From: Vitrella brassicaformis CCMP3155 | Lineage: Eukaryota > Protista > Chromerida | Length of the DNA stretch: 27,809 nucleotides | Assembly (NCBI GenBank): GCA_001179505.1 | Contig: CDMY01000716.1 | Span: 1-27,809 of the forward strand | Direction: 5' to 3' | Shown: piece after piece, positions 6,701-27,448 of the stretch | Layout: every line of letters starts with the position of its first letter | Position numbering within the stretch: the first letter of the stretch is position 1 | The notes under the pieces: model-generated | Seen by the model: the letters and a program-made list of their open reading frames with translations, nothing else | Database searches by the model: none | Told to the model about the DNA's origin: nothing | Made by a program: the position numbers and the translations under genes

Positions 6701-8908
6701 AATGAATGAATGATGGCGGCATAGCGTGGTGCGATCAACCGGTGGGCCGACGGACAGACAGACAGACAGACAGGCGACAGAAACCGACACAAGCCACACA
6801 AGCCAAGCAAGACCCCCATTCTCCCCCACCCACCGTCACCATTCACAAAACAAACCCTTTCTCGAGTCTTCGTATGCACCTTGATCTTGTAAGCAGGCAA
6901 CAGCGTGTGTATGTGTGTGTGTATGCAGCACAGCACAGCACAGCACAGCACTCGAGCAATCCATTCGGATCGTTCGTTCATTCATTCGTCCATTTCTCCC
7001 CGCCGGATGAACGCAGGCGGGAGGGAGGGAGGCAGGGAGAGAGCACCAAACGCAGACCAGTGCACACCAGACGGAGACGAACACAGACAGACGGAGACAC
7101 ATGACGCCCAGATCACACAGACAGACAGACAGAGGCAGGCAAGCAGGCAGGCAGTGAGGCAAGAAAGTTGCAACTTCACACGCACGCACCACAAGACAGC
7201 CGGCCGTCCAGCGCGTGTTGTCCGTCAGTCATTTTGGTCCCTCATATGAGACCAACCCCATTGGCTCGCTCACTCACTCACTCGCCCGCCCCTTCCATTC
7301 CCTCCTCTCCCCTCTCCCCTCCTAAACTCTTCGCACAACTAGCAGGCCAGGCAGGCAGGCAGGCCAGCCGCGTGCAAGAAGCTCTCCCGCGGCCTCTCTG
7401 TGCATGTCTGTGTGGGTGTGCTGTGTGCTGAAAAAGCAGAGAAAATGCATTGAATGCAATGCATTATTGTCATCACGAAAGATGGGTGGGTTGGTGTGTG
7501 CATGCGATGGATCGATGGAGTGGTTGGTGGGTCCACGAGTGTATGGCTGGCTGGCCGGCCTGGCTGCAGGGCGGGCATTAGTAACACTCCCGGTCTCCCA
7601 CACCCACGACATCCATCCACCGTCTGTGCGTGGGAGAGGTAGGGAGGGAGGGGAGACGGCATGCATGCAAGACGGTGGACGGTCAAAAAGCAGTACACAT
7701 CAAGGAAGAAAGGCGAGAGGAAAACACACCCACGTCGACACCCACATCGACACCCACATCCACACAGACACCACGGACGCATCAGCATGTACGGAGTCAG
7801 GATAGCCAGACGAGAGGGAAGAGAGAGAGAAGAGTGGATGGCTCGGCGCCTCTTGCCTCCATCCATGAGTGTCTCTCGCGTCTCTGTCCATCCCGTCATT
7901 TTCGTCACTACAAGACAGGCAGGGAGGGAGGGATGTTGAGAAGGCAGGAGTAGAAAAAAGGACGATTGATCGACCATTCTGCCCTCCCCCTCCCCGTTGA
8001 CGCATAAATGTACCCACAGCACCACCAGCAGCACATCCCACGAGCAGCAGCAGCACACGCAGGCCCCTCCCTCCCTCCTCTCTGTAACAATAGCATCAAC
8101 ACCAAACGTCAATCCTCAACAAGTCAATTCTGCCTGTACCATTCATCCATCCATTCATCCCTGACAAAAGCCAGCCACTCTTGAGGAGCGAGAACCGAGC
8201 GCATGCGTGTGTGTATATGGGCGGGCGGGCAGGCAGGCAGGCAGACAGCACGAGAGTAGCAGCAACAGCATGAAGGCAAGACCATCCTACGTTTGGTACG
8301 TCTCTGTGTACGTCGGTCAGCCAGCAACCCACCCACCCACACCCACACCCTCCCACAAAGCTGTAAAACATCATCACACCCATCCCCCATCAGCAGACAG
8401 CAGATATGGCCATAGACACATACGGACATTGATCGGACAGGAATACAGGCAATACACATGACACACATGGACCGACAGCAGATAGGAGGGTTGACACGCC
8501 ACGGCAGCCGGTAACGCGTTCGTGTGTGTGCGTGTGTGTGTGTGTGTGTCTCGAGGGGCGTGGATGGCAGCCGGCGAACACACACACATAGGTAGGTAGG
8601 TAGGTAGACAGAAAGCATACGTAGATCACTTCGTGTGGAGTGGTTGCGTTGGAGTTGGCACCTATGGATGTATCACACGCAGTGGACAATCGCCAGCCAG
8701 CCAGCAAGCCAGCCAGCCGGCCGGCCGGCCGCCACATAGCACACACGCCACACACGGATCGACATGAAAAGATGAATGCATGGCAAGATAGCGGGATGGA
8801 TATAGATAGCCAGGCAAAGGGCACACACGTCCATCCAAACAAACATACACACACAGACAACCATTATTAGCCGCAACAGACAGGCAATATCCGTCTGTCT
8901 GTACTCTC

Positions 8909-9208
8909 NNNNNNNNNNNNNNNNNNNNNNNNNNNNNNNNNNNNNNNNNNNNNNNNNNNNNNNNNNNNNNNNNNNNNNNNNNNNNNNNNNNNNNNNNNNN
9001 NNNNNNNNNNNNNNNNNNNNNNNNNNNNNNNNNNNNNNNNNNNNNNNNNNNNNNNNNNNNNNNNNNNNNNNNNNNNNNNNNNNNNNNNNNNNNNNNNNNN
9101 NNNNNNNNNNNNNNNNNNNNNNNNNNNNNNNNNNNNNNNNNNNNNNNNNNNNNNNNNNNNNNNNNNNNNNNNNNNNNNNNNNNNNNNNNNNNNNNNNNNN
9201 NNNNNNNN
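8909..9208. other. Assembly gap (300 N)
   Basis: Run of exactly 300 N. The round number suggests a placeholder or estimated scaffold gap. ORFs crossing it are artefacts. Confidence 0.99.
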
Positions 9209-9575
9209 CCCCCTCACCTCTGTCCAATCCAGTCATCAATCCTTCCTCCCACTGCACACCACAACACAACACACGAATAGTGAGAGAGCGAGAAATCGAA
9301 AAACAGTCGGGGCGACCACCCCACCGCACCCCACCTCACCCCGCCCCCCTCACCTCTCCCCACACCACACACATGACAGCAGTAAGACACACATACATGA
9401 ACTTACGTGTGTGTATCTTCGTATGCAGGCAGGCAAGCAGGCAGCCAGCACAACTCCCCTTTCAAAGCCAGCACACACGCACACACGCGCACACAAGGAC
9501 CGACCTTCATATCCGTCACCCAGCCCACTCTCACTCAGGTCATTCAGTCATTCAGTCAGTGAGTCATTCAGTCAG

Positions 9576-12500
9576 TCAGTCGTGTGTGTGGTGCGTGTGG
9601 TGGTTGTCCTTGAAGGCCTTGTTCATCTGCACCCACAGGCGCCCTTCTGGCGCACATCGGATGCGGCCCGGACACTCATGGCTGCCAACCAACGACACCG
9701 TGGCAACGCCAGAACCACCACACAGCCGACTAAGCGATGAAAACAGCACAGCAGACACAGCCAACGAAGAAGAAGTATCCAGGCGGGCCTTCGTGTAAGG
9801 TGTTTAAATGGGTCTATTGTGTGCACCTGTCGTCGACGATCCATTCGTCCGTTCGCGAGAGGTGGTGTGTGTGGAATGCGTATCGGATGAGTGCGATGAT
9901 CTGCTCAAACCTCAGACGCCCATAGCGATCATCACCCGTCGCGCGACAGTCCTCTATCAACAACCTGAGACACCAAAGGCGCACAAACCATAGGTTCCCA
10001 CACCCCTCTGTATGTGTGTGGTTGGTTCTCCTTACCGCCAGATGATATTCTCGTATGAGCGGTTGTATCCAAATGTGTCGTTTGTCTCGCCCAGACCGAC
10101 GGCAGCACGCAGCGACGCGTCGCTCCCATACACGATGTCACCTGACCAACACACACACACACACACACACATACGAAAGGGTGTCTGTCGATGGCCGTTG
10201 ATGGATGGCTCTTGAACTCACCGGCTAGTTTGGAGGGTGGCAGTGCGGGGTCCTTGTGCGTGTGTGGTATGTGCCGGTAGATGACCTCGTGGACGATCTT
10301 GCCGAACGCATACTGGTCGCACAGGGCGTCGCACGTCCCTGTCGACATGGCCGGGTCCTCCTGCACACACAACACAAACAGAGAGAGAGAGATGAGTGGA
10401 CGATGGAACCGGGGCGCTCGCTGGCTGCTGCATACCCATGCGGGCGTTGATCTGACGGGCGTCATGCTGGTTGTGGGCAGGAGGGGGATCGAATCGGCCA
10501 AACCGAAGTCAACAACCTGAACAATCACGCGCCACACCACACCACACCACAGCACAGCACAGCACACATGACGTATCCACGCACTCCGCATCGTCTGGTG
10601 CCGAGTCGTACCACAGGAGTAGCCGGCTCCTTGGCCCCCTTGCTGCCGAACTGGTGCATGAGCAGCACGTTGCACGACTTGAGGTCCCTGTGCGCGACCC
10701 TCCTGCCGTGCAGGAAGGCGCATGCGTTGGCCACGCCGTGGACGAGCGAGTAGGTGACCGCTGGCGACCGGGGGTGGGCGGCTGCAGGGGAGGCGTCGGG
10801 CACTGGGGCGCGGGGGTTGTGCAGGAAGTCAAACAGACTCCCGCCCTCACACCACTCCAGCACCACTCCTGCACAGCGACACAGCGAATACCCACCGTGT
10901 ATTGTGTTGTGTGCACTCCTTCCTATCTATCTGGCTGGGCTGATTGTGCGTACCGATATATGTGTTGTCCCGTTCGAAGGGCGCGGCGCTCGGAGCCGCC
11001 GTGACGCCCAGCAGCCGGACGACGTTGGCGCACCCCCTGCCCCTCTCGGTGTGTGTGAGGTGGTGCAGGAAGCGCACCTCCCGCCGGAGGGCGGCCAGCA
11101 GGGTGTCTTCCTCCTCCATCATGTGCAGCACGTTGTAGCACTTGACCGCCACACGGCTGCCATGGGGGCTCTGGCCGTGCTGCTCCACGCAGAAGACGAC
11201 GCCCTGCCCGCCCGCCTCCCGCCGGTGGTCCTGCGATATGGGCAGCTCGCTCGCCGGGATGATGGGGATGTGCGGGCCGAACAGACGACGGATGGCCTCG
11301 GAGGGGGACAACTGCATGTCACACACACAGAGGCAGACAGGAGCGTACACACACAGCCCTGCCGGACAGGTGTGTGTGGGGGACACCCGACGAGGCGCAC
11401 CTGGTACTGCCTGAGTCTGTAGAGGATGCCGTAGTCAGCCTCCGATATGCCTCCGGGTTTGCTCATCTGTTTGCGTTCGAACATCTCCTTGACGATGTCG
11501 GCGGGCCGTGGGCGGCAGACGGGCGACTGGCAGCCGTGCACTGAGGGGTTGAGCGCTATCAGGTGGGGAGACGTCGCGTCGGCGTAGGCGGGGTAGAGGT
11601 GCAGGGGGTGACACTTAGAAGACGAAAACACCGGACTCGTCACATCATCCTACACACACACACAAGGATGAAATCAGGACAGCCTAGCCTGCATTTCCGT
11701 CATTGTAGGCCTCGCAGAGAGTTGCGCGTACCTGGTCGTGCATCTCCCTAATGAGCGGCAGCGAGGGCACACTCGCTCCCCTCACGCCGACACCCACTTC
11801 CATGTCGATGCCCGCCATACCCACGCCCATACCCATGCCCATGCCCATGCCCAGCTCCAATCCGCCACCATACAAGCCAGTGTTGTCCATGACGGATGGC
11901 GGCAGGCCGGGCGGCGACATGATCGACACGGACACTGCATCACCACTTGCCGGGTATTGCGAAAAAGACGACGGGAAGGGCTCGCTCGACTCACGCAGGG
12001 GCATGCAGGGCTGGGAGGGGATGGCGGCAGGGGGCGGGCAGGCGAATGGCAGCATGTGGGGTGGGGACGGGTTGGGGGGATACCCGCCGCCGGTCGATGT
12101 CGAGCAGTCCGAATCGGCGCGAGTCGAACGCAACAAATCCCACTCTGATCAACAACAACACACACAACACACGAACCAGGAGATGCAGGATTTGGTTGTG
12201 CTGATGCGTTGCGCACAAGCGTACCTCCACTTGCCCGACTGTCGGCCCTCCTCGGCTGCAACATGCCGCCACATCCCCCTTCACACGCAGGCAAGTAGAC
12301 GCCACCAACACCAGCACCAGCAGTCGCCACACCGCCCTGCTGCAGCTGCTGCCCAGGGTCCCTCACGGCATTGTCCTTCCTCCCTCCTGCGCGTGAGTTG
12401 GTGTAGAGCAGCACAGTAGGCGAGATGGGTGCCACGGGCGAGGGCAGGCAGCCTCCTGAGCCGTTGTGTGCGGCCTTGCGCATGAGGACGGCTGGCGGGG

Positions 12501-12585
12501 TGGCGTCCATGTAGTTGCAGGGGGGAGATGGCGAGGGGGAGCTGACGGCCCGCGACACTCGGCCATCATAGGCTCGGCCATACAT
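9576..12585 (-). CDS. Protein kinase, TKL-like (HRDLKSxN), ~751 aa, long low-complexity N-terminal region
   Basis: Exons (minus): 12585-12225, 12144-11732, 11649-11401, 11311-10954, 10868-10612, 10516-10436, 10360-10222, 10141-10036, 9964-9827, 9729-9576. Total 2256 nt, all GT-AG, phases consistent. Motifs: EAGGQGVV (Gly loop), VAVK, REVRFL (alphaC Glu), VVLEWCEGGSLFDFLH (hinge), HRDLKSCNVLL, VVDFGLA, STPAWEDP, DQYAFG, LIEDC...RLRFEQII. The last exon is less certain, since read-through would stop at TAG 9816-9814. Confidence 0.9.
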
Positions 12586-13426
12586 CCTTCCTTACCGGAC
12601 GGACGGACCGACGGACACACCGACAAACGACAAGACACGCACACACCTGCAGACACGCAAGCAACCCAACCACAGACAGTCAGACACACAGTGAGACACG
12701 CCTGACTCACACCCTCCTCCCCGCTTCAGCCCTCCCGTCCCCCCCCTGCCCGTGTGTGTGCCCTCGGTGTGCGTACCTTTCGTTGTGCCTTGTCAGTCGG
12801 CACACGAAGCTAGGCTAGACAGACAGACACGCTGTCGTGTCTTGAGGAGCGAGGTGCGACACACCCACCCTCTCGGTCGTTGTCGCGCTAGTCACTGTGG
12901 CGAGCGGGTGGGCGGCAGGTAGACACTCCAACCAGACTGGCTAACGCAGGCAGGAGTAGGTGTACGTCAAAGAGGTGAAGCGGAGGCCGGCTTGTCGAGT
13001 TATCAGCACAGGTATTCTGTGAAGCTGGATTCAGGTAGTAGGTGTGGCTGATTTCCCTGCGCGGCTTTCCTGTCCCGAGTGCGAGCTTGGAGTGGATCGC
13101 GAGGCAGCTCGCAGTGCAAAACTTAGCCCTGCGTTTTCCTGTGTTTTGATCCCCCTGTTTCCCTCTCGGTGCTCGTGTTGCGACTGAGAGTTTTCGCTCG
13201 GTTGGAGTGTGGTGCGCTGGGCGCCTGTCTGCGACACAACGTGTGGCCTGGAGACCCCTGCGCCCCAGTGAAGTTCGGCATTTGATTCAAGACAGCACAC
13301 CCGTGTACATAGCGTCACCTCCCCTACCGAAGGGGTGCCCCTTTGCCCCCTTGACCTGCAACTGCAGCCGACAGACCGAACCGGAAGCCACAGCGGTCAA
13401 CCGCACTCGTGTGCGTGACTGGCAGC
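12586..13426. promoter_or_regulatory. Divergent intergenic region (putative bidirectional promoter and 5' UTRs) between the kinase and the multi-AP2 gene
   Basis: The start codons at 12585 (-) and 13427 (+) face away from each other, 841 nt apart. A possible non-coding 5'-UTR exon of the kinase lies at 12809-12777 (minus: CTAG|...AAAG|GTACGC). No promoter element was identified directly. Confidence 0.5.
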
Positions 13427-16400
13427 ATGGACGTGCCCAGTGGCATGCCCGATGAGGACCTCAAGGCCAAGCTCACTCAGGTGACCAATTTGAGCAAGTT
13501 TCGCGCAAGTCGATCCCGTGCGAGCGAGGGCGAAAGTTTGTTCCGTCCTGTGCTTGTCAGTTGGGCATCACTGAGAGGGATTGGATGGACGCCACCCTCG
13601 AGCAGAAGCTGACAACGCTGGATTTGGTGGCGAAATTCAAACAACGTCTGGAGCCACCTGCACCCACCGGTGCCGCTGGTACGGACGTAGCTAGGAAACA
13701 CTGCACACGCGACACGCACACGTGCACCTGGATGTGCGCTCACGCACGAGGGAGGGACGGGGAGTGAGGAATCTGTGAGTTGCGTCGGAGTGCGAGTGCT
13801 TGGCTAGCCTAGCCAGGAGTGTGTGTGTGCCATTGCTGTGTAGCAATGGGGTCGTGGCCAGTGCAGGTGTGCGTGCGGGTGTGAATGCTCTCCCTCTCTG
13901 CTGTGTGTGCCTTGCAGGCCCGTCCGCACCTCCGTTGACTGAGATGGGCGGCATGGCAGGTGAGGCGGACGCCCGAGCACCCACAACCACACACACACAC
14001 ACACACGTGATTGTGCGTGTCTCATGCCCGTGTGTGTGTGCAGGAGACCTGCCTGCGCCAGGGTCGTTGGGGAAGCGTGACGAGGACACTCTGTCGATCC
14101 AGGAGGCCAGCAAGGTGGCCCTCTCACTGCTGGCCAAACTCAAGGACCACATCACTGAGAAGGTACGGCTCCTGCTGGGCGAGTGTGTGATCCGGGGTCA
14201 CTGATGTGTGTGTGTGTTGTGTGCAGGTGCGTCAGGCCAAGCAGGTGGCCGAGGACCCCAGCTCGATACAAGACGTTCCTACACTCGAGGCACTCGGTAG
14301 GCGCAGAAAAGCCATACCACACAGGGAGGATGTGTTGATTGACACGTGTGTGTGTGTGTGTGTGTGCAGGTGTGACGTGGGACCGGTCTGACTGCGCCTT
14401 CAAGGCATCCATGTTCAAAGGACGCAAGAAGGTCAGTCAGTCAGTCCCTCACACACTCACAACTTGCTTATGAGGATGGATCCACATGTGTGGTGGTTGC
14501 AGATTCAGTGTGCAAGCAAGGCGTACCCGCGCTACCTCAACCCCGACTGCATCTTCGCCGCGCTCAAGCTAGCACTCCACATGAAGTGCAACCTCGCCGA
14601 CGAGTAAGCGACCGACCCCACCCCACACTACATCAATGTTGACCTGTGTGTGTGTGTGTGTCATGTGTGGTGTGTCTGTCAGGTTGGGTGTGTGTACGTT
14701 TCTGCACGTCAATGACATCGATGCGATGCTGGAACCCATGACACTCGGCATGACGCAGCAGACGGGAGCCGGTACGCAACACACACACACACACACACGC
14801 TCACACACACACACCTCAATGCCTCCCCTCCTCGTGTGTTTGTGTGTGTGTGTGCTTAGGTGACCTGGTTGGCGACTCGTTCAGCATGGCCAGCAGCCGG
14901 CCGGCCGCGGGCGACAAATCCCCATTGCCGGTAAGGGCTTGAACACCATCGCACCGCAAGGCACCCACCATCCATTCATCTACTGCTTCCACACGTTGTG
15001 TGTTCATCTGTGTCGTGTATCAGAAGTTGGTCATCGAGGATGTGAATCAGGAGTTGACGGGCCAGGACGCCCACCGTGTGGCCCACACACTCCTCACCAT
15101 ACTCAGACGCATCAAGGCCGCACAAGACGCTCTCACACCCACCGTATGCCATACAACACAACACACCTTCCCCCCTCTCCCCCACCACACAAGTGTCCCT
15201 GGCGGCTGTGTGTGTGTGGGCAGGTTGTTGGTGGTGTGGTGGGCAAGAAGTTGGAGCCGGTGGGCATAGCGTGGTACCCGCAGCACCTGGCCTTCGTCCC
15301 GCAGTTCCTCACCGTCCAGCGGGAGATGCACTACAAACACCCCATCAAACCGCACGATCTCAGCGTTGCCGGTAATTGCTCACACACACTCATTCATTCG
15401 CAATGGTGACACATGTGTGTGCGTGTGTGTCTGCGCGTGTGAATTCTGTGTGCAGGTCTGATTGACGCGCTCAGCCGCGCCATCGTCGAGCGCAACATGC
15501 TGGCGGCTGAGCTCAAGGTGAGCCAGGCGCCACTTCACCACACCAACGGCACTACACAAGCCCGTGTGTGACTCCCTCTCTCTCTCTTTTCACCCTCCCA
15601 TCTGTCTGTCTGTGCAGTACGAGAGTCGTGTGAACCCCGAGGCTGCCAAGGCGGTGGAGGCCACCTTCATGCGCATGATGGCTCAGAAGCACGCAGCCGC
15701 ACCCGTGGCCAAGACCACCATCAAAACCACAAAGGTAAGGTACCCACACCCCCCCGCCCGTCTGCCCGCTCGCCACTCGCCACTCGCACTGAGCCATTGA
15801 TGTGTCACGTGTATGTGTAGGAGGAAGAGTTGACTGACGAGGAGTGGCATGGCGACGAAGAGACCGCGGGCCGCAAGCGCCCCAGGCCCAAGCACCTCAG
15901 GGACACCACTGGCAGTGGGGGCCAGGGCGGGTCGCTGGCCGCATCATTGGCCAAGAAAAAGAAGACCAAGGCCATGACGCTCCAGGTCATGACGCAGCAG
16001 CAACGGGATGGCCTCGGTGAGTTGCTGGGGCGGGCAGGGGGGAGGGAGGGGGAACAAGACACACACAACGGGGAGGATAGATGGATATATATGTGTGTGT
16101 GTGTGTGTGTGTGTCAGCTTCAATAGATGAGGGCGACTTGTTGGCGGAGAGTCTGCTCATTCAGCTCAGACGGTGGCTGCGGGCGACAGGGGAGAGCAAA
16201 AAAGGTCGGCCTGACCGCACCCACTAACCACACAGGCAGAGTGTGTCACACTCAGCACCTCATGCCCATGTGTGTGTTCCCTCTCTGCTTGTATGCGTCC
16301 TTCACACGACAGGTCAGTTTGGACTGTATTGGCAGCGAGGCGTCAAGGGCTTCTCCACTGCCTTCCGTATGGGCGACAAGCTGACCACGTCCGACCCCCA

Positions 16401-19400
16401 GTCGCCCCCCGACCTCAGCGAGATCAACATACGGATCGCACTCAAGTCAGTCTCACACAAAATGAGTGGATAACGTGGCGCGTGTGTGACTGATTGGGTG
16501 GCTGTCTGTGTGTCTGTGTGTCTGTGTGTCTGTCTGCAGGAATGCCATCCTCGAGCGCAACATTTTGGCCCAGGGTCTGCCCAACAAGTCGTTCATCCAC
16601 CCGGATTGTGTCGACCAGGTGCGATCCACACACACTCGTGAACACCCTCAACTCACACAGATATCTACTCACGGATGTCACCATGCCATGTGTGTTCTAC
16701 GCCACTGCAGTTGTCGGGTGCGGTGGAGGTGACTCGCGAGCAGTTTCTTCTGCGCGAGATGAATGCCAGCATGGGCATCTCAGACGTGTCCGGCACCAGC
16801 AACCCGCCATCCCCTGCCATGCCAGCACTCATGCAGCCCAGCCAGAAGGCCGCAGCCAAGACGCGCACCAGCTCGCGGATGCCGCGGTCCACCACGCGAC
16901 ATGCCACCGTCATGCTCAACGCCGTCATGGCCCACTACCAGGAGAACTTCCACCCACACGACCCGCTGCGCATCCACTGGGACCCCACCTCACAGGCAAG
17001 GATACATACGTGGGTGTCTGTCAGGGGTCAGACCTGACGTGGTCATTGGTGCTGTATGTATGGTGTTGTCGTGTGTTGTGTTGTGTTGTGTGCAGGGTTA
17101 CCTTGTGGGCCCTGTTGATGATCCTGAGAACGAGGCGTTGCTGTTCACACCCAACGACGACGGAGACAAAAGCAGCCTAGAGGTGCGTTCGTGGGTGGGT
17201 CGGTGGCCTGACCACCCGTCTGACCACCATCAATGTGCTCAAATCACTCTGTGTGTGTGTGTGTGTGTGTTCAGGAGGCTTTGATCGATGCGTTGCGTGC
17301 GGCGGGTGCGCCGGCCGGTCTGCTGGACATCTTCCACAACGGGGTGCTCGACGACCTGCTGGCCGAGCCCGTCGCGGTCAAAGAGGAGGAGGAGGGCGGA
17401 AGGCGCGGCAGAGTCAAAAAGTAACCTTATCCCTCACACACAGACACACAGAGACACACACAGACAGACGGCAGGAGTAAGGAAACCGGTGTGTGTGGTT
17501 GTGTGTTTGGTTGGCATGGCAGGCACACGCCGGCGACAGGCAGCCGTGGCAAGTACGGTGCTGGGACGACCAGCGTGCACGTGCCCGTCATGGCCGGCCG
17601 GGACTACAACAGCCACGCCTCTGCTTCCGCTACTGCTGCTGCCGCCAGTGAGTTGCCTGCATCAAGTAGGGTCAGGGAGGGATGCATTGGTTTGTCGATC
17701 TGTGTGTGTGCAGGTCGTTCGTCCAACGCCCCTGTGCCAGCGCCGTCCCACGACCGGGCGTACTGGAGCCAAGACTACGAACTCACACTCACTGGTACAC
17801 ACAGAGACACTGACAGACAGAGAGAGGGAGGGAGGTGAACGGGATACGCGAGAACAACCTGTCTGTCTGTCTGTCTGCCTGTCTGTCTATGATCAGAGAC
17901 GATTCGTCACGCCAACGTGTTGCTGGACCAGCTGCGTTACACCAACGACATGCCCAAGAAGAGCCTCCCGCAGCGGTCCACCGGGGTGGGCGGCGGGGCC
18001 ATACCCGGACTGGGCATCTACTGGTCCAGGAACGAATCGGCATACAAGGTACACACACACACAGGGAGGCAGGGAGGAATGTGAGTGATGTGGACTGAGT
18101 GCGTGTGCGTGTGGTGTGGTGTCCATTGGTCTGGTGGTTTGCATTGCAGACGGTGTTTTTCCGTAGCGGCAAGCACTACTGGGGCAAGACGCTCTACGTC
18201 CGCCCTCCCTCGCCAAAGGCACTGCTCGAAGCTCTCGAGGTAAGCAGGTGCACATTGCTTTGCCACACGCATCCACATACACGGGCGGTGTGCACACGGA
18301 TTTGTGTGTGTGTGTGGGCTAACTAAGGTCGCTGTTGACTGCCGGAACGAGCTGGCCCGCAACGTCGGCATTGACCACTGCATCTCATTCGAAATCTGCG
18401 AAAAGTACTGACTTACGCCCAACAGAGGCAGCAGCCACAGATGAAGCGGAGGCACATCACGTGTGTTGTGTATGTGTGGGGTGGGTCGTTTCGTTCTTTG
18501 CTCAGGTACGGTGTTCCTCCCGACCCCTTCAAGATGCAGCAGAGGAACCGCATGAGAGCCAAACCCAAAGCCAAAGACAAAGACAAAGACACACCTGGTA
18601 GGGTACCTACCTGCACACAGCATCGCACAGCAGACAATGCACAGCTCAAACAAACGTTAACTGTGCTGTGTGCTGCCTCTGTTTTGTTTCTCTCTCTCTC
18701 TGTCATCAGCGATCATTGTCCCCAGTGCGGCCAAGAAACGCGCCGCTGCCAAGGCAGAGAAGGCAAAGGAGCCCGGTAAAGTAGATAAGAAGATGACTAC
18801 ACAAGACGAGACTATAGACGCCACATCAAACCAAACCACACCGCATACATACACACCGAACGTGTGTTTCTCTCTCTCAGAGGAGGAGGAGTTGAAGGAG
18901 GCCAAGGGTGAGCACACGACGGTGGCCCAGGGCTTCCTCCTGCAGATGCGCATCGCGCTGCGGCTGGAGCGGCCCAACGCACGCTCAAACCTTGGCATCT
19001 TCTGGCGACCCGACGAGGGGTTCGTCACGGCCTTCAAGGTCGACGACAAGGAGGCAGTGGGCAACACCTACCCACCCAAGAAACCCATCACCAGTAGGAG
19101 AACAGAAAGGAAACGGGGGTCTGGCCTGCACGTGTGTGGTTCGTCCAAATGTGTGTGTGGCATGATCTGATTGTGTCAGTTCGTTCGCTGCGCAAGGCTT
19201 TGCGTGAGTCCATCGACGAGCGCAATCGGCTGGCCGAGAGCGTGCAGTCGTCTTCGAGACTCAACCCTGCCGTGGTCGAACAACTCAGCTCTGACACTCA
19301 GGTGCCTACACACAACCACACACACACACACACACAGACGGAGAACAATCTTCTTTCTCTGTGTGTGATGGATGAACATTCATGAATCAGGATTTGGGCA

Positions 19401-20840
19401 AGGGTGCGAGCATCAAGCACATCCCGCTGCTGAAGGTGTGTCTGGACCCCTCCAGTGGCACCAGTGCCGACGGCGAGTCAGCAGACGGATCCACAATGAA
19501 AACTGAAGACGGTACAGACCACACACACACACACCCATACACAGGACTAGAAACACATAGATATCTCTCTGTGTCTTTCTTCGACTCTGAACACAACACA
19601 ACATACGTGCAGATTCGCTGACGTTGTCAGCTTTGCGTTTGCTCGAGGAGGTCCGTGGCGAGTGGAAGCGGCATCTCAAGGCACAGATGGCGCCCACTGC
19701 CGACGCTGCAGCTCTCCCCCCCACTCCACACGTGCCCCTGGGGGTGGACTGGGACGTCAAGGAGCTCTCCTTCGTCGTCGACGGACACCACAAGCCGCAC
19801 AGCGCCGCGGCGCTACTCGGTGCACAGCCAAGCGACCGGCCCACCCACCCTCTCATCAAGCCGCCCACCCTGACCAAGGAGGGCGTCCAGGCGGCCTTGC
19901 GTGAGGCGTTGCGTGCCAAGCATGTGCCCGAGCACATCTTCGAGCGTGCGTTGGAGGCCTACAAGAAGCGGTGGGGCAGCCAGGAGTCACCGAGTGGCGG
20001 CATAGCGGCAGCACCTGCTGGGCCCGCTGCTGGTGCTGGTACTGCCGGAGGGTCGCCGGGGAGCCGACGGGAGGGCAACGGGGCCAGCTCGGATGCTACG
20101 CAGGTACATGTATCTAGCCACGGACAAAGAGGTGTCGGTCGGGGCGCTAGTGCACTGCACGTGTGTGTGTGGTTTGTGTGTGGTCACTTGGTTCAGGTGG
20201 GTGATATGATGGGCGGCATGCATGCCGGCAGCGACACCATCACCGTCAAGCAGGAGATGCCGGACAACGTCCAGCAGGGTAACAAGATGCACACACACCA
20301 CACCAGCCGACACACATCCTATCCACGGCTGCCCTGCTCTGTGCGTGTGTGTGTATGTATGTGTGTGTGTTGGTTCAGACCCCAGTGTGATGCCGATGCC
20401 AGGGCCGGGTCAGCCCCAGCCACCGGCGGTGTTCCACCACCCGCCCCCACCATTCTACCCTCCACACTTCCACAGCGGCGCTCCTCCACCCATGCCATTC
20501 CAGACTCTCTACCAGACCGCTCCACCACCTGGTAGGGTGGGTGACACATTCATCCACTCATACACACACAGAGAGAGAGCTGACGGCGCCGTTTCTCATC
20601 TCTCTTGGCTCTGTATGTGTGTGTATGTTTGCAACAGGCATCCACTCGCCGGCTCATGCGTTTGCGGCAGCAGCAGCTGCAGGGTACGCCCCGGTGCCGG
20701 CCTGGCCGCCGCCCTTCGGTGCTGGCGGTGCGGCCATGGGGTACCCCTCACGGATGCCCCACATGCCGCCCATCAAGATGGAGGGATTCGTCGCACCCGG
20801 CGCGCCCCCCTCCTCGACCACGCAAGGCCAGCAGATGTGA
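13427..20840 (+). CDS. Multi-AP2-like-domain protein (putative ApiAP2-related DNA-binding protein), 34 exons, ~1417 aa, seven helix+AP2-like modules
   Basis: Exons: 13427-13480, 13561-13678, 13918-13959, 14044-14162, 14227-14296, 14370-14431, 14503-14603, 14683-14771, 14860-14930, 15024-15143, 15224-15371, 15456-15517, 15618-15734, 15821-16016, 16118-16204, 16313-16445, 16540-16618, 16711-16995, 17096-17182, 17275-17420, 17523-17647, 17714-17794, 17897-18048, 18150-18239, 18328-18404, 18506-18597, 18710-18775, 18881-19093, 19180-19301, 19391-19511, 19613-20103, 20197-20278, 20379-20531, 20638-20840. Total 4254 nt, open from MDVPSGMPDE to GQQM-stop with every phase consistent. Seven copies of G[VIL]xW-x4/5-[AGS][FY] followed by an AL..A[IVL]..RN-type helix match AP2 spacing. 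Basic NLS-like runs and a Pro-rich C-terminus are present. Gene structure is high confidence; the AP2 assignment is by motif recognition only. Confidence 0.8.
14091..14690 (+). other. AP2-like module 1 of 7
   Basis: Spliced translation LSIQEASKVALSLLAKLKDHI...EAL-GVTWDRSDCAFKASMFKGRKKIQCASKAYPRYLNPDCIFAALKLALHMKCNLADEL. Basic beta region, close to the AP2 pattern GVxWDKxxxxWxA...GK...A..LA. Confidence 0.7.
15054..15517 (+). other. AP2-like module 2 of 7
   Basis: LTGQDAHRVAHTLLTILRRIK...EPV-GIAWYPQHLAFVPQFLTVQREMHYKHPIKPHDLSVAGLIDALSRAIVERNMLAAELK. Confidence 0.7.
16118..16580 (+). other. AP2-like module 3 of 7
   Basis: SIDEGDLLAESLLIQLRRWL...GQF-GLYWQRGVKGFSTAFRMGDKLTTSDPQSPPDLSEINIRIALKNAILERNILAQGL. 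Confidence 0.7.
16898..17304 (+). other. AP2-like module 4 of 7 (degenerate, acidic)
   Basis: RHATVMLNAVMAHY...DPL-RIHWDPTSQ|GYLVGPVDDPENEALLFTPNDDGDKSSLE|EALIDALRAAG. Lacks the first Gly and the terminal RN. Confidence 0.5.
17780..18363 (+). other. AP2-like module 5 of 7
   Basis: LTLTGETIRHANVLLDQLRY...PGL-GIYWSRNESAYKTVFFRSGKHYWGKTLYVRPPSPKALLEALEVAVDCRNELARN. Confidence 0.72.
18890..19230 (+). other. AP2-like module 6 of 7
   Basis: EHTTVAQGFLLQMRIAL...SNL-GIFWRPDEGFVTAFKVDDKEAVGNTYPPKKPITIRSLRKALRESIDERNRLAES. Confidence 0.68.
19615..19923 (+). other. AP2-like module 7 of 7 (degenerate, with insertion)
   Basis: SLTLSALRLLEEVRGEWK...VPL-GVDWDVKELSFVVDGHHKPH(SAAALLGAQPSDRPTH)PLIKPPTLTKEGVQAALREALRAKH. 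Confidence 0.55.
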
Positions 20841-23295
20841 ATCAATCAACGGGGGTTGGGGTGGGTGTGCAGGGGGTGAGGGATGGCTCGTGGGCGTGGC
20901 GTGCTGTATTGCTTCCTGCGGGTGGTGGTGATGTGATGTGAGATACTGCTTTGGGTGGTGGGTGAGGTGCGTCGGGCGAATGGAATGGGTGGCTGAATGG
21001 GATGGGTGGCTAGCATAGATGGATATAGGCGTGGGCTCGGCGCCTCTTTTTTCCTTGTTGTATCCGATAGATCGGTCTGGGCGGTCGGGGTGAGTGGGTT
21101 GGTTGTGTGTCTGTGTGTGTAATGTATATCATGTCATCTCGTGCGTGTGTAAACGTGGCAATTGTGGTCTGTCTGTCGTCGGTCTGGCACCGCACCGTAC
21201 CGTCTGTGTGTCTGTGTGTCTGTCTGTCCACCTCTCGCCTCACTCTCCCGGTGTGTCGGTAGTAGACAGATGCGACAGCATGCATGGCATGGCATGGCGT
21301 GACTGCAAGACAGAAAGAGATACGATACTCATGGACGGACGATTGCCAAATGCAGCGGGGGGGTGGCTTTGTGTTGCTTTGTCTTCTGGGCGGTTAGCAA
21401 ACGAGCGAGAGAGAATTCGGCCGATAGATGAGATGTGGTGGTGCTTGGTGCGTTTTGACCTACCTGGCTGGCCGGGCCTCCAGAGTGGCTGGCCGTCAGA
21501 TTGTGTTCAGCCTGACCGTTGTTTTGTTTTCGCACCAACGCACACCACGTCGATCCACATCCCTCCGTTTGTCTAGTCTCTTCCCTTGGTCTGTCGGCTG
21601 AGCACCTACCTGCCTCTCTGCCTCTCTGCCTGCCTGCCCCTTGCCAGCAATGCAGTAGCGAGATCGGCACAAAACGCGCCTCCAATGCATCCAGAACAGA
21701 GATTCTATCCAGTCCATTGTCCATTCTACCCGTCTCCCCGTCTGCCTTCCTGCCTTGCCTTCCTTGCTGTGGTCCGCCTGTCTGCCTGTCTGTCTACCTG
21801 TCTGTCTGTCTGTGTATCTAAACCATGCCCTTCCGTGTACACAGTGAAGTCCTGGCTCTCTCCTCTGCTTCCTCTCACTGACCTAAGCGGCTGGGTGGCT
21901 GGCCGGGCGAGTGTGGGTAAGGGTGCGAGTGTGAATGCGTGGAGGTGGAGGTGGGTTGGGGGCAAGGCAAGGTACACCAGACACCACACACTCAGACAGG
22001 CAGGCAGACAGGCCGACCGCCCATTGATTGCCCCGTGCATTTGTCGTCTGTTCGTACCACATGTGTGTGAGGGGAGGGAGTGTGGGTGCCTAGCAGACCG
22101 TGTGGGAGACCGAGTGCGTAACCGTACCTGTGTATAAGATTCGTATTTTTGCCTGGCTGGCTGGCTGGCTGGCTCCTGGTTGTCTGTCTTGTCTAGTGTG
22201 TGCATACGACTGCTGACGGACGGTGGCCGGGCTGGGGGCCGGGGGGGAAGGCGTGTGAAGGCGGGTTTTTCGTACCTACCTACCGAGACATACACACACA
22301 CACAGATGCAGTGCAGCAAACACAAGGTGGATTGGAGGACAAGGCACTTTTCAAGGCTGGGGATGGGGTGGCTAATGCGTACACGTAGACAACACAATGA
22401 CTGATCTAATCCATGTAGCCTGTCTGTCTGGGGGAGGGAGGGACAGGTCGATGCTCAGCCTGGCTCCGATTGACACACGTGACGAGCCAAGCTAGCTGTC
22501 GGTCGCCCCCGCCTCTCACCCCTCTCTCTCTCTGTCTCTCACTGCGGGCGGGTCACTCACAGGCAGACACCCACGCACATGAAGCTCGATCTCTCTATCC
22601 CTCTGTCTGGCTAGCACATGGCTCTTTGGTCGTGATGTCTAGGTCTAGGAGAAATACCCACCTCCCTGGCGGAGCGGGCAATAAGTAAGACCATCCATGA
22701 GTGCCTGTCGGCCTGCCTGTATGCCTGCCTGCCTGCCTGCGTGACAAGCTCGCCGAGCCTGGTGTCTGTCTGTCTGGCTACCTCTGTTCCATCCCGTTCA
22801 TCCCATGGGTTTATTCGGCCATCTAATGCGGTGGGTTTCTGACCCATGGAGCGGATCGATCGGTAATGGAACGGAGGGTGGATGGGCACGACCTGCCGGC
22901 CCGGCTTGGCTGGTTGCGTGGGTGGGGGGCTGGCTGATGTGTGCGTGTGTGTGTGTTTGGACTGGCTGCTTGGCTGACTGTGTGGCTGTTTGGATGGCTG
23001 GATGGATGGATGGATGGACACACCACATAGACACACCATGTGCAAAGGACACTCTGATCTAATAAGCTCATTACGGCGGCGGAAAGCGCATTGCCAACAT
23101 CAACGCAGCCGGCTGGCTCACAGTGCGGTATGTGTGACGCCTTCATTTCCATGCCGAAACACGTCAGCCCCCGTCCGTCATTTCTGTACAGCTAGCTGTC
23201 TAGTCATCAACACACGTACACACGCACACACGCACTCACGCACTCACGCAGCTAGCACCCACCACACGAATGGAGTCAGCTGGCAGAGAGAGGGG

Positions 23296-23318
23296 CAGAC
23301 AGACAGACAGACAGACAG

Positions 23319-23348
<30 letters not shown>
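23296..23348. repeat. (CAGA)n followed by a (TG)n microsatellite
   Basis: cagacagacagacagacagacagat gtgtgtgtgtgtgtgtgtgtgtgtgtgtag. One of many such arrays in the window. Confidence 0.85.
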
Positions 23349-23351
<3 letters not shown>

Positions 23352-24424
23352 CCGTGCCTGCGAATGGATTGACGTTCTGCTGCTCCCTGTCCGCCCGCCA
23401 CCGAGCGGCGTCGAGGGACAGACAGACAGACAGACAGATGGAGACCCTTATGTGTAATGTATACAGACCCCGTGTGTGTGCCGCGCTCCGGATGGACGCG
23501 ATCAGCTTAGCTAATGCTATTCACTCATTGCAACAGCCAGGCATTAAGACATACGAACACACACATCCCCCAGCTGATATGCACACCGTCTCTCTCACTC
23601 AGGATCGTCTGTCTGTCTGTCTGTCTGTGTTTGGGCTCGCCGAGCGCCTCGGCAGCTACCGCCCTCACACTTCAATCAGGCCACCGTATGTGTGCCTTGC
23701 CTTGCCTTCTGTCCGCCCATCTCCCTCTGGTACTGTCTGTCCTCTGTCCTCTCTCTCCGACCCACACACATGAGTGGGGCAATGGGAGAGGGGAGGGGCG
23801 GAGTCGACAGACAGACAGACAGACAGACAGACAGGGACGAGCGAGCCAGACAGGCAGACAGACCGGCAGAGAGGTGTAAGGAAACGATTGACAGAGAGGA
23901 GAGGAAGAGGCAGACCATTTATCCAGGCATCCATCTAGCCATCGGGTGGTGTGGGAGAGACCTGGAGAGGGGCACCCAGGTAGTCAGGCGAACAGGTCTC
24001 ACACACCCGCACACACACTCACACACTGCGGCCGAGCCATCACGTCACCCCCAGCAGTGGAGGGCAACACACCAGCCCCACCCCCACAGCCAGGCAGCCA
24101 GCCACCCAGACAGGCGCATATCAACAGAGAGGGAGGGAGAGAGGGAGGGAGGTGCAGAGAGAATGCATGGCACAACGCAGGCAGGTCGCCCACCCAGAGC
24201 CATTGGGTAATGTCAGCAGCTGGTCTCTCTACAGAGTGGGAGGTATACGATCTCTCTCTACCACAGACAGCCATAAGTCGATTCGGGCATACAGCAGCCA
24301 CAGACGGCACTGCAAACACTCTGCCAAGACAAACACACAAACAGGTGACACCCATACAGACAGAAGATTCGAACACACTGTGGTGTGTGGGTACCTGTGT
24401 GGTCCGGTATTTGAGTTGGGTTGA

Positions 24425-26891
24425 TCAGTCGCCATTCTCCTCCTCGGCTTCAGATGCATTGTCACCTGTCATGAAGACACACACCCACACAAACCTGGAT
24501 GTGACGCGGGTCGGTGTGAGTCTATCTGTCGTCCGCTGTGTGTGTCCCTCCCTCGTGTGTACCTCCGCTGTGCTCTCCGTCGCTGTCATCATCCAGATCA
24601 TCCCAGTCACCGCCATGGCCGTCGGAATCTACACCACACACAAAGACAGACAGAGAAGAAATGCCATCCGTCCATCCATCCATCTATCCATGGCCACCAT
24701 GTGTGTGTGTGTCCCTCCCTCCCCTGTCCGCACCGTCATTATCGCCACTGTCATCGTCTACTTGTCCGTCGAAGATGTATGGCGCCACTCGTCCCAGCGC
24801 CACACGGGCCAGCCGAGTGGTCACGGGGAAGCAGTCCTTGAAGGCACCACCACTCATCTCCCTCGACCCCACAGCCCCGGGGACCTTAGACACGGCAGCC
24901 TCGGTCGTCTTGACAAGAACCTCCACTGCAGACAGACAATGACACACAGAAACGACACATGTGGCAGTTTACGATCAGAGCCGCCTGTCTGTCGCCCTGA
25001 CCGGTGCCGTCCTCCAAATCCTCAATCCCAAGCCACGCGACGAAGTCGTGGCTGCTGTCGGTCAGCACCAGGTATCGCACACAACCGTCACTGCTGAATG
25101 TGGTGGTGCAGCCGGCCACTGGTGTGTGGGGCGACTGGGTGAGGAGGGAATCCAGACGGCCGCCACCAACACGCCTGAACCAACCACACCACACACAAAC
25201 ACAATCAAAGACGCACCCCTCTCACCCACTGGTGCCATCGGTGGGTTACCTGTTGAGGTCTATCGATGCGCAATAGGTGCGCCAGTGGTGTTTCCACTCG
25301 AAGTGGTTGAGGACCAAACGCTTGGCCCACGACGACGCCGACGCATCGTCGGTGCGGTTGCCGAACCCCCCACCCCCAAATCCGCCGTCGAATTCGTCCC
25401 AGTAGTTGCGGCTGCGCACTGGTGGGTCATGCTCTAGTCGGTGCTGCTCATACAGGTGGCCGGCAGGGAGGGGCCCGTCATCGAGGTCCTCCTCGTCCTC
25501 GATGACCTCCTCGTCCTCGATGGCCTCGTCCTCGATCACGGGGGCATCTATGAGCAGCCGGTAGTCGGCCTCGTCCTCGATGGCCTTGTCATAGAAGGCC
25601 CGCACCTCATGGCCATGGCGGAACAGCTTCAGCCGGCTGCCTTGCCCTTCGCCGTCCTTGAACCGCACACGGCGGCCCACCACCATCAGCTGCGCCAACA
25701 CACGGGGAAGCGACACATACGCCTGCACACACGACAACACACACACACACACACACACATGGATGAGCGAATAAGGCGATTTCTTCCCCTCCCTCCCGCC
25801 CTGTGAGTCCCACCGTCTTGTCGGCATGTTTGTTGATGTTGGCAGCAGTGACCTTGACAGGCAGCTTGCACCTGCCGCACTGCTCCGCCCACCGCAGCAC
25901 CTCAGCCACCTCGTCCCACGTCTGCTCCTCCACCAGCCACATGGCCGCCAGCACCACACCTGGCTCAGACACGGTCTGGGCGTCGAAGACCAGCACGGTG
26001 TCGAGCCGTGTGCCGTCGGCGAGCAGTTTGTGGTGCAGCGAGTGGGTGAGGCGGGTGCGGAGGGCGGTGAGAGGGTAGTCGACGAGGCTGTGGTGGCGAG
26101 CCGCCATTCTGAGGCTGCCGACGTCCTTGACCTTGAGCAGCCGAACTCGCGAGCCGCCGAAGATGCAGCGGACCGCCTCGTTGTTGATGACGGGCGAGTC
26201 CAGGTCGCTGCTCCTGCTGCTGATCTTGGTGGCACCTCCCTGTTGCTGCTGTGTCGCTGCCGCAGCACCACCCGCACCAACCGAGCCACCTGAAGGCACC
26301 ACACAGCACAGGAGGGTCATGACGATATGCAGTCCACCAACGGCAGCCGATGCTTTGCGTACCTCCACTGTGTCCACCACCAGCAGGGCTGATGTCTACG
26401 CGTCTACTCTTCTTGGCGCCGCCGTCATCAGCAGGCGCCTGACCAGCGACACACATCAATGAGTTTGTCTGTCTGTGTGTCTGTGTGGGTGTAGGCTTGA
26501 GAGCGTACCGCTTCGCTATGCTGTTTGTTGCTGTCGGTCTCCTTCGGTCCCACGGCCGCCTCGCCGTCGACATCCATTCGCTGACATAAACACACATCGA
26601 CACACAGAGGAGTGGACAGACAGACAGACAGACAGACAGGCAGCACAGTGAATGAATGGTCGGTCTAGCGCCTCCCTCCCTCCCTCCCTCCCTCCCTCAC
26701 CGATTGGATCTGATCTATGACATCTCGCAAGCTATCGTCCGACAAGTCGCCCCGCCCACCTGCACCACACACCATCACCACACACACCATCACCACACAC
26801 ACACACACACACACATGACAGCCGTGTGTGTCCATTGTGTGGGTCATCGCCCACCTCTGGAGGGAGCCGGGGCGTCGTGGCTACTGTCCAT
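24425..26891 (-). CDS. Hypothetical protein, 10 exons, ~554 aa, acidic C-terminal tail; probably a member of a lineage-specific expanded family
   Basis: Exons (minus): 26891-26855, 26759-26701, 26580-26509, 26438-26363, 26289-25814, 25722-25250, 25174-25002, 24925-24734, 24628-24563, 24465-24425. Total 1665 nt, all GT-AG, phases consistent: MDSSHDAPAPSRGGRGDLSDDSLRDVIDQIQS...VLAAMWLVEEQTWDEVAEVLRWA...GGGRLDSLLTQSPHTPVAGC...DFVAWLGIEDLEDGTVEVLVKTTE...FKDCFPVTTRLARVALGRVAPYIFDGQV...EEENGD-stop. Family membership is from recollection of Vitrella hypothetical proteins and was not searched. An in-frame extension 5' of 26891 is possible (TACAG acceptor at ~26913). Confidence 0.82.
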
Positions 26892-27404: not shown

Positions 27405-27448
27405 GGCGGCTCCTTGCTGATGGATGGATGGATCCTTGCTGATGGATG
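27405..27448. repeat. 22-bp tandem duplication CCTTGCTGATGGATGGATGGAT x2
   Basis: Read directly; coordinates approximate to a few bases. Confidence 0.75.

What the first reader, a model, noticed from the sequence alone, without database searches (positions are those of the whole stretch)
13427..20840. A 34-exon gene encoding seven tandem, highly divergent AP2-like domains, hidden from the ORF track by its introns
Seen: after splicing, the ~1417-aa protein has seven copies of a G[VIL]xW...[AGS][FY] hairpin (GVTWDRSDCAF, GIAWYPQHLAF, GLYWQRGVKGF, RIHWDPTSQGY, GIYWSRNESAY, GIFWRPDE-GF, GVDWDVKELSF). Each is followed ~25-45 aa later by a helix (AALKLALHMK, DALSRAIVERN, IALKNAILERN, EALIDALRAA, EALEVAVDCRN, KALRESIDERN, AALREALRAK). 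Known: this spacing matches the AP2 fold (three-stranded sheet plus helix; GVxWDKxxxxW...A...AI..R), and characterised ApiAP2 proteins typically have one to three domains, rarely four. Here the second aromatic is F/Y in all seven copies instead of the usual W. Inference: a seven-domain AP2 array, possibly a divergent subfamily below standard HMM thresholds, that could read a long or repetitive DNA element.
Basis: partly seen in the sequence, partly recalled or inferred. Interest (0 to 1): 0.85.

Follow-up and report, generated by a model that had tools for sequence, protein, structure and literature searches.

The report
Seven hidden AP2-like domains, one gene
A real, expressed 34-exon gene, probably from the alga Vitrella (a free-living relative of malaria parasites), encodes a 1417-residue protein with seven very divergent copies of the AP2 DNA-binding fold that standard domain searches miss, more copies than the one to four described in the parasites' AP2 regulators.

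Summary
A transcript scaffold (L001) and RNA contigs from four runs confirm a 34-exon gene. Its CDS runs 13427..20840 and encodes 1417 aa. All seven hairpin and helix strings are present.

Six modules detect each other in leave-one-out HMMs at 16-38 bits, against 9 bits or less for the best of 1000 shuffles. Module 4 is marginal.

No sequence method links the modules to any family. Pfam, PHROGs and PDB profiles gave nothing, and only the protein itself turned up in two very large protein libraries.

Predicted structure does link them to AP2:
- Module 3 folds confidently (pLDDT 88) as three strands plus a helix.
- Its four best matches among 48,161 solved chains are a PfSIP2 AP2 domain and three T. 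gondii mitoribosome chains, Z 5.9-6.7, next 4.3. A paper's chain table labels two of those three as AP2-containing.
- Its best AlphaFold-DB clusters are named AP2/ERF.
- A protein-language-model search returned AP2 as the only recurrent named family for modules 5, 6 and 7.
- The weaker module 5 model does not discriminate.

Each core is preceded by a conserved helix.

Verdict: a divergent, HMM-invisible AP2-fold array. It is probably a nuclear nucleic-acid-binding factor, but binding is untested, and module 4 is acidic and degenerate.

The scan has flagged similar divergent AP2-like arrays on other pieces of this genome.

The parts
13133..20850 (+). Transcribed region seen in one transcript scaffold (5' UTR 13133..13426, 34 exons, start of 3' UTR)
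   Evidence: L001 aligns at 100% identity, except in short overhangs at exon ends, through all exons. RNA contigs appear in four runs.
13427..20840 (+). CDS of 34 exons, 4254 nt, 1417 aa. Exons: 13427-13480, 13561-13678, 13918-13959, 14044-14162, 14227-14296, 14370-14431, 14503-14603, 14683-14771, 14860-14930, 15024-15143, 15224-15371, 15456-15517, 15618-15734, 15821-16016, 16118-16204, 16313-16445, 16540-16618, 16711-16995, 17096-17182, 17275-17420, 17523-17647, 17714-17794, 17897-18048, 18150-18239, 18328-18404, 18506-18597, 18710-18775, 18881-19093, 19180-19301, 19391-19511, 19613-20103, 20197-20278, 20379-20531, 20638-20840
14091..14686 (+). Module 1 (aa 88-190; core aa 132-187 = 14287..14598): upstream helix plus GVTW hairpin plus helix. 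Net charge of core +6.
15051..15514 (+). Module 2 (aa 252-351; core aa 293-349 = 15254..15508). Net charge 0.
16016..16579 (+). Module 3 (aa 457-543; core aa 486-541 = 16204..16573). Net charge +2. This is the module with the confident AP2-like model.
16873..17325 (+). Module 4 (aa 611-697; core aa 640-694 = 16960..17316): degenerate and acidic (net -9), with R in place of the hairpin G. Marginal in leave-one-out tests.
17779..18366 (+). Module 5 (aa 793-891; core aa 834-889 = 18004..18360). Net charge +4. AF2 gives beta3-alpha at pLDDT 65.6.
18895..19244 (+). Module 6 (aa 962-1049; core aa 992-1047 = 18985..19238). Net charge +2.
19502..19941 (+). Module 7 (aa 1106-1218; core aa 1149-1215 = 19732..19932). 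It lies in a single exon and has an insert of about 11 aa between the sheet and the helix. Net charge 0.
15866..15976 (+). Two basic clusters (RKRPRPK at aa 409, KKKKTK at aa 436) that look like a nuclear localisation signal
   Evidence: Read from the sequence. Function is inferred.
19960..20837 (+). C-terminal low-complexity tail, aa 1225-1417, rich in P, A, G, S, Q and M
16996..17095 (+). The only GC-AG intron of the gene
   Evidence: RNA joint in three runs

Best explanation
The region is one expressed gene. Earlier notes of this scan place it in Vitrella brassicaformis; I did not verify the organism. Its 1417-aa product carries seven tandem copies of a repeat unit of about 100 aa. Each unit is an amphipathic helix, a variable linker, and a core of about 56 aa: a three-stranded antiparallel sheet that starts with G-[VIL]-x-W, followed by a helix with an invariant A-L.

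The core is a very divergent member of the AP2/integrase-type DNA-binding fold. It is closest to myzozoan (apicomplexan, chromerid, dinoflagellate) AP2 domains but has drifted below every sequence threshold.

Inferred mechanism: the protein enters the nucleus through two basic clusters between modules 2 and 3. It then contacts nucleic acid through the sheets of the modules that kept a net positive charge and an arginine just after the tryptophan (modules 1, 3, 5 and 6). Modules 2, 7 and especially the acidic module 4 would serve as spacers or protein-contact units. The P/A/G/Q-rich C-terminal tail would act as an effector or interaction region.

Shown: the gene, its splicing, the repeats, the predicted fold and its nearest structural neighbours. 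Inferred: homology to AP2, nuclear location, nucleic-acid binding and any target.
For: - Gene and single transcript.
- Repeat family.
- Fold: AF2 of module 3 with the seven modules as its alignment gives pLDDT 88, pTM 0.72, strands 7-11, 16-23 and 26-29, helix 40-59. AF2 of module 5 gives the same order of elements at pLDDT 65.6.
- Unbiased structural search of 48,161 PDB representatives with the module 3 model: ranks 1-4 are 9hqv_Yn (Z 6.7), 9i05_XH (6.3), 6sy0_A, the PfSIP2 AP2 tandem (6.2), and 9g6k_LG (5.9). The next hit scores 4.3.
- Chains Yn and XH are listed as 'AP2 containing' (AP2IX-6, AP2XII-10) in supplementary file 4 of PMC11742926. Four AP2 proteins in that ribosome are also reported in PMC11652630.
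- Foldseek against PDB puts the same chains and 3igm at ranks 1-6, with probability up to 0.96.
- Foldseek against AlphaFold-DB clusters: ranks 1-4, 6, 7, 11 and 12 are named AP2/ERF or AP2 domain-containing protein, probability 0.99-1.00, TM by query 0.62-0.76, 13-25% identity.
- Language-model features: AP2 (PF00847) is the only named family with more than one hit for modules 5, 6 and 7 searched separately, giving 23, 20 and 24 of the 100 nearest clusters.
- Charge pattern and basic clusters.
- Context: chromerids carry a large AP2 expansion (PMC4501334).
Against: - No sequence method reaches AP2. Pfam gave nothing for any module at E<=10. PDB sequence profiles gave nothing, and PHROGs nothing relevant. 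hhalign against a plant ERF profile gave probability 0.1-0.2%, although that profile also misses the solved apicomplexan AP2 domains.
- All Foldseek E-values are above 0.01, and all Z values are below the 8 that the tool's own note asks for.
- The module 5 model does not single out AP2: PfSIP2 is rank 2 at Z 4.0 in one list and rank 8 at Z 3.6 in the other.
- The confident model rests on a 7-row alignment of internal repeats.
- Atlas scores of 0.76-0.87 are below the tool's 0.9 line.
- The usual second tryptophan is F or Y in all copies.
- Module 4 is acidic, and modules 2 and 7 are neutral.
- AP2 domains in the T. gondii mitoribosome act on RNA or as scaffolds, so the fold alone does not imply DNA binding.
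Confidence: 0.6

Rival explanations
1. The modules do have the AP2 fold, but the protein is not a sequence-specific DNA reader. The domains would act as RNA-binding or protein-scaffolding units, as the four ApiAP2 proteins built into the Toxoplasma mitoribosome do.
For: - Three of the four best structural matches are mitoribosomal chains, two of them confirmed AP2 proteins, and they bind rRNA or act as scaffolds.
- Three of the seven modules have lost net positive charge, and one is strongly acidic.
- The usual second tryptophan is replaced in all copies.
- No AT-hook, ACDC or zinc-finger partner domain was found.
Against: - The N-terminus is acidic and does not look like a mitochondrial presequence (read by eye, no predictor was run).
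- Two classical basic clusters and a P/Q-rich tail fit a nuclear factor.
- Modules 1, 3, 5 and 6 keep basic sheets.
- PfSIP2, a DNA-bound AP2, matches as well as the ribosomal chains do.
Confidence: 0.25
2. The repeats are a lineage-specific small beta3-alpha domain unrelated to AP2. The resemblance would be convergence on a very common small arrangement, with AlphaFold drawn towards a familiar fold.
For: - There is no significant sequence link to any family.
- All Z values are below 8 and Foldseek E-values are 0.017 or higher.
- The module 5 model matches PH, SH2 and Mediator pieces as well as it matches AP2.
Against: - With the confident model, the top four of 48,161 chains are PfSIP2 and three T. 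gondii mitoribosome chains (two confirmed AP2), and they stand 1.6 Z above the rest.
- AlphaFold-DB top clusters are AP2/ERF at probability 1.00 with 17-26% identity.
- A method that uses no structure returns AP2 for three other modules.
- The register of G-V/I-x-W, the aromatic in strand 2 and the helix matches the AP2 layout.
- The host lineage is the one with the largest known AP2 expansion.
Confidence: 0.12
3. The exons belong to several genes, or the model is an artefact of chaining open frames.
For: L001 is a scaffold with a 10-N gap in exon 20, and the gene caller split it into 802-aa and 640-aa products.
Against: - X7 and X8 contigs cross the gap position without a break, and X1 record 2 joins exons 20 to 23.
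- The genome keeps one frame open through all 34 exons.
- Contig coordinates add up exon by exon.
Confidence: 0.01

Closest known systems
ApiAP2 / myzozoan AP2 domains (Pfam PF00847; solved examples PfSIP2 6SY0, PfAP2-EXP 3IGM, T. gondii mitoribosomal AP2IX-6 and AP2XII-10)
   Same: - A domain of about 60 aa with three antiparallel strands and a C-terminal helix.
- A G-V/I-x-W start of strand 1, an aromatic in strand 2 and an alanine-rich helix.
- These are the nearest structural neighbours of the confident model.
- The host lineage has a large AP2 expansion (PMC4501334).
- Several domains occur per protein.
   Different: - No Pfam match for any copy.
- The second conserved tryptophan is F or Y in all seven copies.
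- The loop between strand 3 and the helix is longer.
- Every core is preceded by a conserved amphipathic helix.
- There are seven copies, against one to four in described apicomplexan proteins (PMC6631176).
- No ACDC or AT-hook was detected.
Plant AP2/ERF GCC-box binding domain (AtERF1, 1GCC/2GCC/3GCC)
   Same: The same general fold. 2gcc_A appears at Z 3.9 and WRI1 at Z 3.5.
   Different: Profile-profile comparison with 20 to about 108 plant ERF domains finds nothing. The plant signature YRGVRxRxWGKW and the RAYD-type helix are absent.
Arm-type DNA-binding domains of tyrosine integrases (lambda Int N-terminus, HPI and P4-like integrases)
   Same: The same fold superfamily. Weak matches: 3jtz Z 3.0-3.5, 2wcc 3.7, 1z1b 3.5, and the N-termini of IntE and phiRv2 integrases.
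   Different: Z values are lower than for AP2. There is no integrase catalytic domain, and this is a eukaryotic multi-exon gene.
Other arrays of divergent AP2-like modules flagged by this scan in the same genome (unchecked notes)
   Same: Notes describe genes with about 9 and about 14 divergent AP2-like modules, a KDM4 fusion with 6-8 such domains, and a 'capping helix + divergent AP2-like core' module.
   Different: No sequence look-alike of this protein was found among the notes. Kinship between those arrays and this one was not tested.

Membership tests
AP2 domain (Pfam PF00847) | Significant match to the family HMM | tested here: not met
   hmmscan of P0001, of the N-terminal 694 aa and of each of the seven modules returned no AP2 match even at E<=10. 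Exons 11 and 16 alone also gave none.
AP2 domain (Pfam PF00847) | Domain of about 60 aa with a three-stranded antiparallel sheet packed against one C-terminal helix | tested here: met
   Predicted only. Module 3: pLDDT 88, strands 7-11, 16-23 and 26-29, helix 40-59. Module 5: same order at pLDDT 65.6.
AP2 domain (Pfam PF00847) | Solved or predicted AP2 domains are the nearest structural neighbours, clearly above unrelated folds | tested here: inconclusive
   Met for the module 3 model: the top 4 of 48,161 are PfSIP2 and three T. gondii mitoribosome chains (two confirmed AP2), Z 5.9-6.7 against 4.3 for the next hit, and AlphaFold-DB clusters named AP2/ERF score probability 1.00. Not met for the module 5 model. 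All Z values are below 8 and all E-values are 0.017 or higher.
AP2 domain (Pfam PF00847) | Conserved sequence signature (G-V-x-W/F in strand 1, W-x-A in strand 2, alanine-rich helix) | tested here: inconclusive
   W is invariant, G-[VIL] is present in 6 of 7 copies and A-L in the helix is invariant. The strand 2 aromatic is F or Y, never W. No alignment to ApiAP2 sequences was possible because none could be fetched.
AP2 domain (Pfam PF00847) | Binds double-stranded DNA through the sheet | not testable with these tools
   Only charge could be examined. The cores of modules 1, 5, 3 and 6 are net +6, +4, +2 and +2; modules 2 and 7 are 0; module 4 is -9.
ApiAP2 transcription factors | One to four recognisable AP2 domains, often with ACDC, AT-hook or zinc finger, in a nuclear protein | tested here: not met
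   There are seven sub-threshold domains and no ACDC, AT-hook or zinc-finger match. NLS-like clusters are present, but localisation is untested. The domain-number range comes from PMC6631176.
Integrase arm-type DNA-binding domain | N-terminal small beta3-alpha domain attached to a tyrosine recombinase catalytic domain | tested here: not met
   Structural matches are weak (Z 3.0-3.7). No recombinase domain appears in Pfam scans.

The most novel reading that the evidence does not exclude
The helix-capped, F/Y-type module is a distinct AP2 subfamily that profile searches cannot see. Chromerids would deploy it in long arrays, much as animals deploy poly-zinc-finger proteins, to read long composite DNA elements. 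If so, published AP2 counts for chromerids, and perhaps other myzozoans, are substantial underestimates, and this protein is one of the highest-valency AP2 readers known.
Probability: 0.25. Interest if true: 0.7.

Novelty: new variant of a known kind. Interest (0 to 1): 0.55.

Why it matters
AP2 proteins are the main specific transcription factors of apicomplexan parasites and their algal relatives. Their repertoires have been counted with HMMs (PMC4501334, PMC4117751). This gene shows that a whole protein built from seven AP2-fold units can be invisible to those HMMs.

Three things follow:
- The chromerid AP2 repertoire is probably undercounted.
- The fold tolerates loss of its second hallmark tryptophan and the addition of a capping helix.
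- Arrays far beyond the one to four domains of parasite ApiAP2s exist.

The gene also gives a concrete, expressed test case for two questions: whether multi-AP2 arrays read long DNA elements, and whether some units have become spacers or RNA or protein binders, as in the Toxoplasma mitoribosome.

Tried and rejected
- **Rfam on the whole window:** nothing.
- **Earlier notes by place and by sequence:** blank.
- **Exhaustive HMMER search of 1.84 billion representatives with exon 31 (module 7):** only the protein itself and P0002, a 5171-aa protein with Laminin_G/Ig-like domains. The P0002 hit is a sum of 17 repeats of 0-7 bits each, so I rejected it as chance amplified by repetition.
- **Word-indexed searches:** the module profile and P0001 residues 1-300 found nothing but self. 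The length filter excludes the full-length protein and long relatives.
- **PDB sequence searches with P0001 and with two module profiles:** no AP2.
- **PHROGs:** two single-member hits at E 0.05-0.26, ignored.
- **tblastn against phages:** none.
- **Related loci in JGI metagenomes:** the module alignment was too divergent to make patterns, and the N-terminal 694 aa had no relatives.
- **hhalign against plant ERF domains fetched with the AtERF1 domain as seed:** no match. I treat this as uninformative because that profile also fails to find 3IGM and 6SY0.
- **An alignment that included the upstream-helix exons as fragments (A2):** misaligned them onto the C-terminal helix, so it was dropped.
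- **First splice model:** chose five wrong sites (exons 1/2, 5, 15, 31, 33). These were corrected from RNA evidence.
- **Pfam on large ORFs elsewhere in the window:** said nothing about the neighbours.
- **Intron positions across modules:** most are not shared, so they give no strong evidence on how the array grew.

Full report
**1.

The region is GC-rich (0.55-0.63), and short ORFs are interrupted by introns whose 3' parts are TG/CA-rich.

RNA contigs of four public runs laid on 14150..20149 show 15 splice joints: 14 GT-AG and one GC-AG at 16996..17095. A splice-graph model, corrected at five sites from the contig coordinates, gives 34 exons, a 4254-nt CDS and 1417 aa from ATG 13427 to TGA 20840.

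Two database objects then confirmed the model independently:
- P0001, a 640-aa ORF, equals residues 778-1417.
- Its contig L001, a 4574-nt JGI transcript scaffold, aligns to window 13133..20850 through all 34 exons with exactly these boundaries.

L001 has a 10-N scaffold gap at 17316, which is why the gene caller split it into two products. X7 and X8 contigs cross that point, and X1 record 2 links exons 20-23. The transcript is therefore single.

The 5' UTR of 294 nt has no ATG and has in-frame stops. Median exon length is 109 nt and median intron length is 93 nt.

Earlier notes of this scan name the organism as Vitrella brassicaformis. I did not verify this.

**2. The repeats are real**

The hairpin-to-helix offset is constant at 38-39 aa, or 50 aa in module 7, which carries an insert.

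| Test | Modules 1-3, 5-7 | Module 4 | Best of 1000 shuffles |
|---|---|---|---|
| Leave-one-out HMM, core only | 15.6-30.2 bits | 7.7 bits | 4.8-7.9 bits |
| Leave-one-out HMM, 45 upstream residues included | 19.7-38.4 bits | 4.7 bits | 5.0-9.0 bits |

The higher scores with the upstream residues show that an amphipathic helix (LLxxL type) ahead of each core belongs to the repeat unit. A scan of the whole protein finds exactly seven copies.

The tool alignment of the seven cores has three invariant positions: the tryptophan and A-L in the helix.

Modules 3, 5 and 7 share a phase-1 intron 7-8 residues ahead of the upstream helix. Other intron positions differ. This is only a hint that the duplicated unit began at that helix.

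**3. Sequence methods give no family**

- Pfam finds nothing for any module, for the N-terminal 694 aa or for P0001, even at E<=10.
- PHROGs, PDB sequence profiles, phage tblastn and a JGI metagenome scan are blank.
- The exhaustive search of 1.84 billion representatives with exon 31 found only the protein itself and a spurious repetitive match.
- Word-indexed searches found only self.
- hhalign against plant ERF domains finds nothing. That profile also misses the solved apicomplexan AP2 domains, so this negative says little.

**4. Predicted structure and language-model features point to AP2**

*Models.*
- Module 5 with a fragmentary alignment gave pLDDT 65.6. It shows a helix, a disordered linker, three strands and a helix.
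- Module 3 with the seven complete cores as its alignment gave pLDDT 88 and pTM 0.72, with strands 7-11, 16-23 and 26-29 and helix 40-59.

*Module 3 model against 48,161 PDB representatives, without Foldseek pre-filtering.*

| Rank | Chain | Z | Identity |
|---|---|---|---|
| 1 | 9hqv_Yn | 6.7 | T. gondii mS130 = AP2IX-6 |
| 2 | 9i05_XH | 6.3 | T. gondii mL161 = AP2XII-10 |
| 3 | 6sy0_A | 6.2 | PfSIP2 AP2 tandem |
| 4 | 9g6k_LG | 5.9 | T. gondii mitoribosome chain; identity not confirmed here |
| 5 | (next, unrelated) | 4.3 | |

Supplementary file 4 of PMC11742926 lists chains Yn and XH as AP2-containing. PMC11652630 independently reports four AP2 proteins in that ribosome. AtERF1, WRI1 and the integrase arm domains follow at Z 3.5-3.9.

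*Foldseek.*
- Against PDB, the same T. gondii mitoribosome chains and 3igm fill ranks 1-6.
- Against AlphaFold-DB clusters, ranks 1-4, 6, 7, 11 and 12 are named AP2/ERF or AP2 domain-containing protein, with probability 0.99-1.00 and TM by query 0.62-0.76.

*Language-model features.* A search that uses no structure returned AP2 as the only named family with more than one hit for modules 5, 6 and 7 searched separately. Scores were 0.87, 0.82 and 0.76.

*Limits.*
- All E-values and Z values are modest for so small a domain.
- The module 5 model does not discriminate.
- The good model rests on a 7-row alignment.

**5. What it probably does**

- Cores of modules 1, 5, 3 and 6 are net +6, +4, +2 and +2 and keep an arginine one or two residues after the tryptophan.
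- Modules 2 and 7 are neutral, and module 4 is -9.
- Two basic clusters (RKRPRPK and KKKKTK) lie between modules 2 and 3.
- The last 193 residues are rich in P, A, G, S and Q.
- The N-terminus is acidic.

This is the layout of a nuclear factor with several nucleic-acid-contacting units, some degenerate units and a low-complexity effector tail. Binding, targets and location are all inferred. The mitoribosomal AP2 proteins show that this fold can also serve RNA binding or scaffolding, and that is the main rival.

**6. Comparison and novelty**

Apicomplexan ApiAP2 proteins have one to four AP2 domains of about 60 aa, each with three strands and a helix (PMC6631176; PMC4117751). Chromerids have a large HMM-defined AP2 set: 136 genes, including one Vitrella cluster of 50 (PMC4501334).

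This protein fails the HMM definition but matches the fold. It adds a capping helix, replaces the second tryptophan and has seven copies. I file it as a new variant of a known kind.

The scan has flagged similar divergent AP2-like arrays on other pieces of the same genome. The phenomenon is therefore probably a family trait rather than a single oddity. Those notes are unchecked, and no sequence look-alike was found among them.

Noticed in passing
window 16996..17095: This is the single GC-AG intron among 33. It is supported by RNA joints in three runs.
   Followed up: partly
window 14338-14375, 14643-14675, 14771-14861 and most other introns: The 3' parts of introns carry (TG)n/(CA)n tracts. 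RNA and DNA contigs from elsewhere in the genome share them and produce loose ends at 14205/14223 and 17063/17089.
   Followed up: no
window 17300-17320 (exon 20); L001 2377-2386: Transcript assemblies break at the GC-rich stretch GCGCCGGCCGG. L001 has a 10-N scaffold gap there with a 6-nt overlap, and X1 contigs also end and start there. This made the gene caller split the product into 802-aa and 640-aa pieces.
   Followed up: yes
P0002 (5171 aa, database protein): A giant protein with Laminin_G and Ig-like domains matches the insert of module 7 in 17 weak repeats of 0-7 bits each. These sum to E 5e-14. I judged it chance amplified by repetition.
   Followed up: partly
window 18557 (exon 26): Contigs in three runs carry a loose end (GGGCAAGGCGAAAGCCAAGGGAAAGGCAGC) that joins at the lysine-rich KAKDKDKD stretch. 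It may be an allele, a paralogue or a repeat collapse.
   Followed up: no
window 1..13000 and 21000..27809: Large ORFs on both strands gave no Pfam family. The neighbouring genes remain unidentified, and no further AP2-like hairpin occurs outside the gene.
   Followed up: partly
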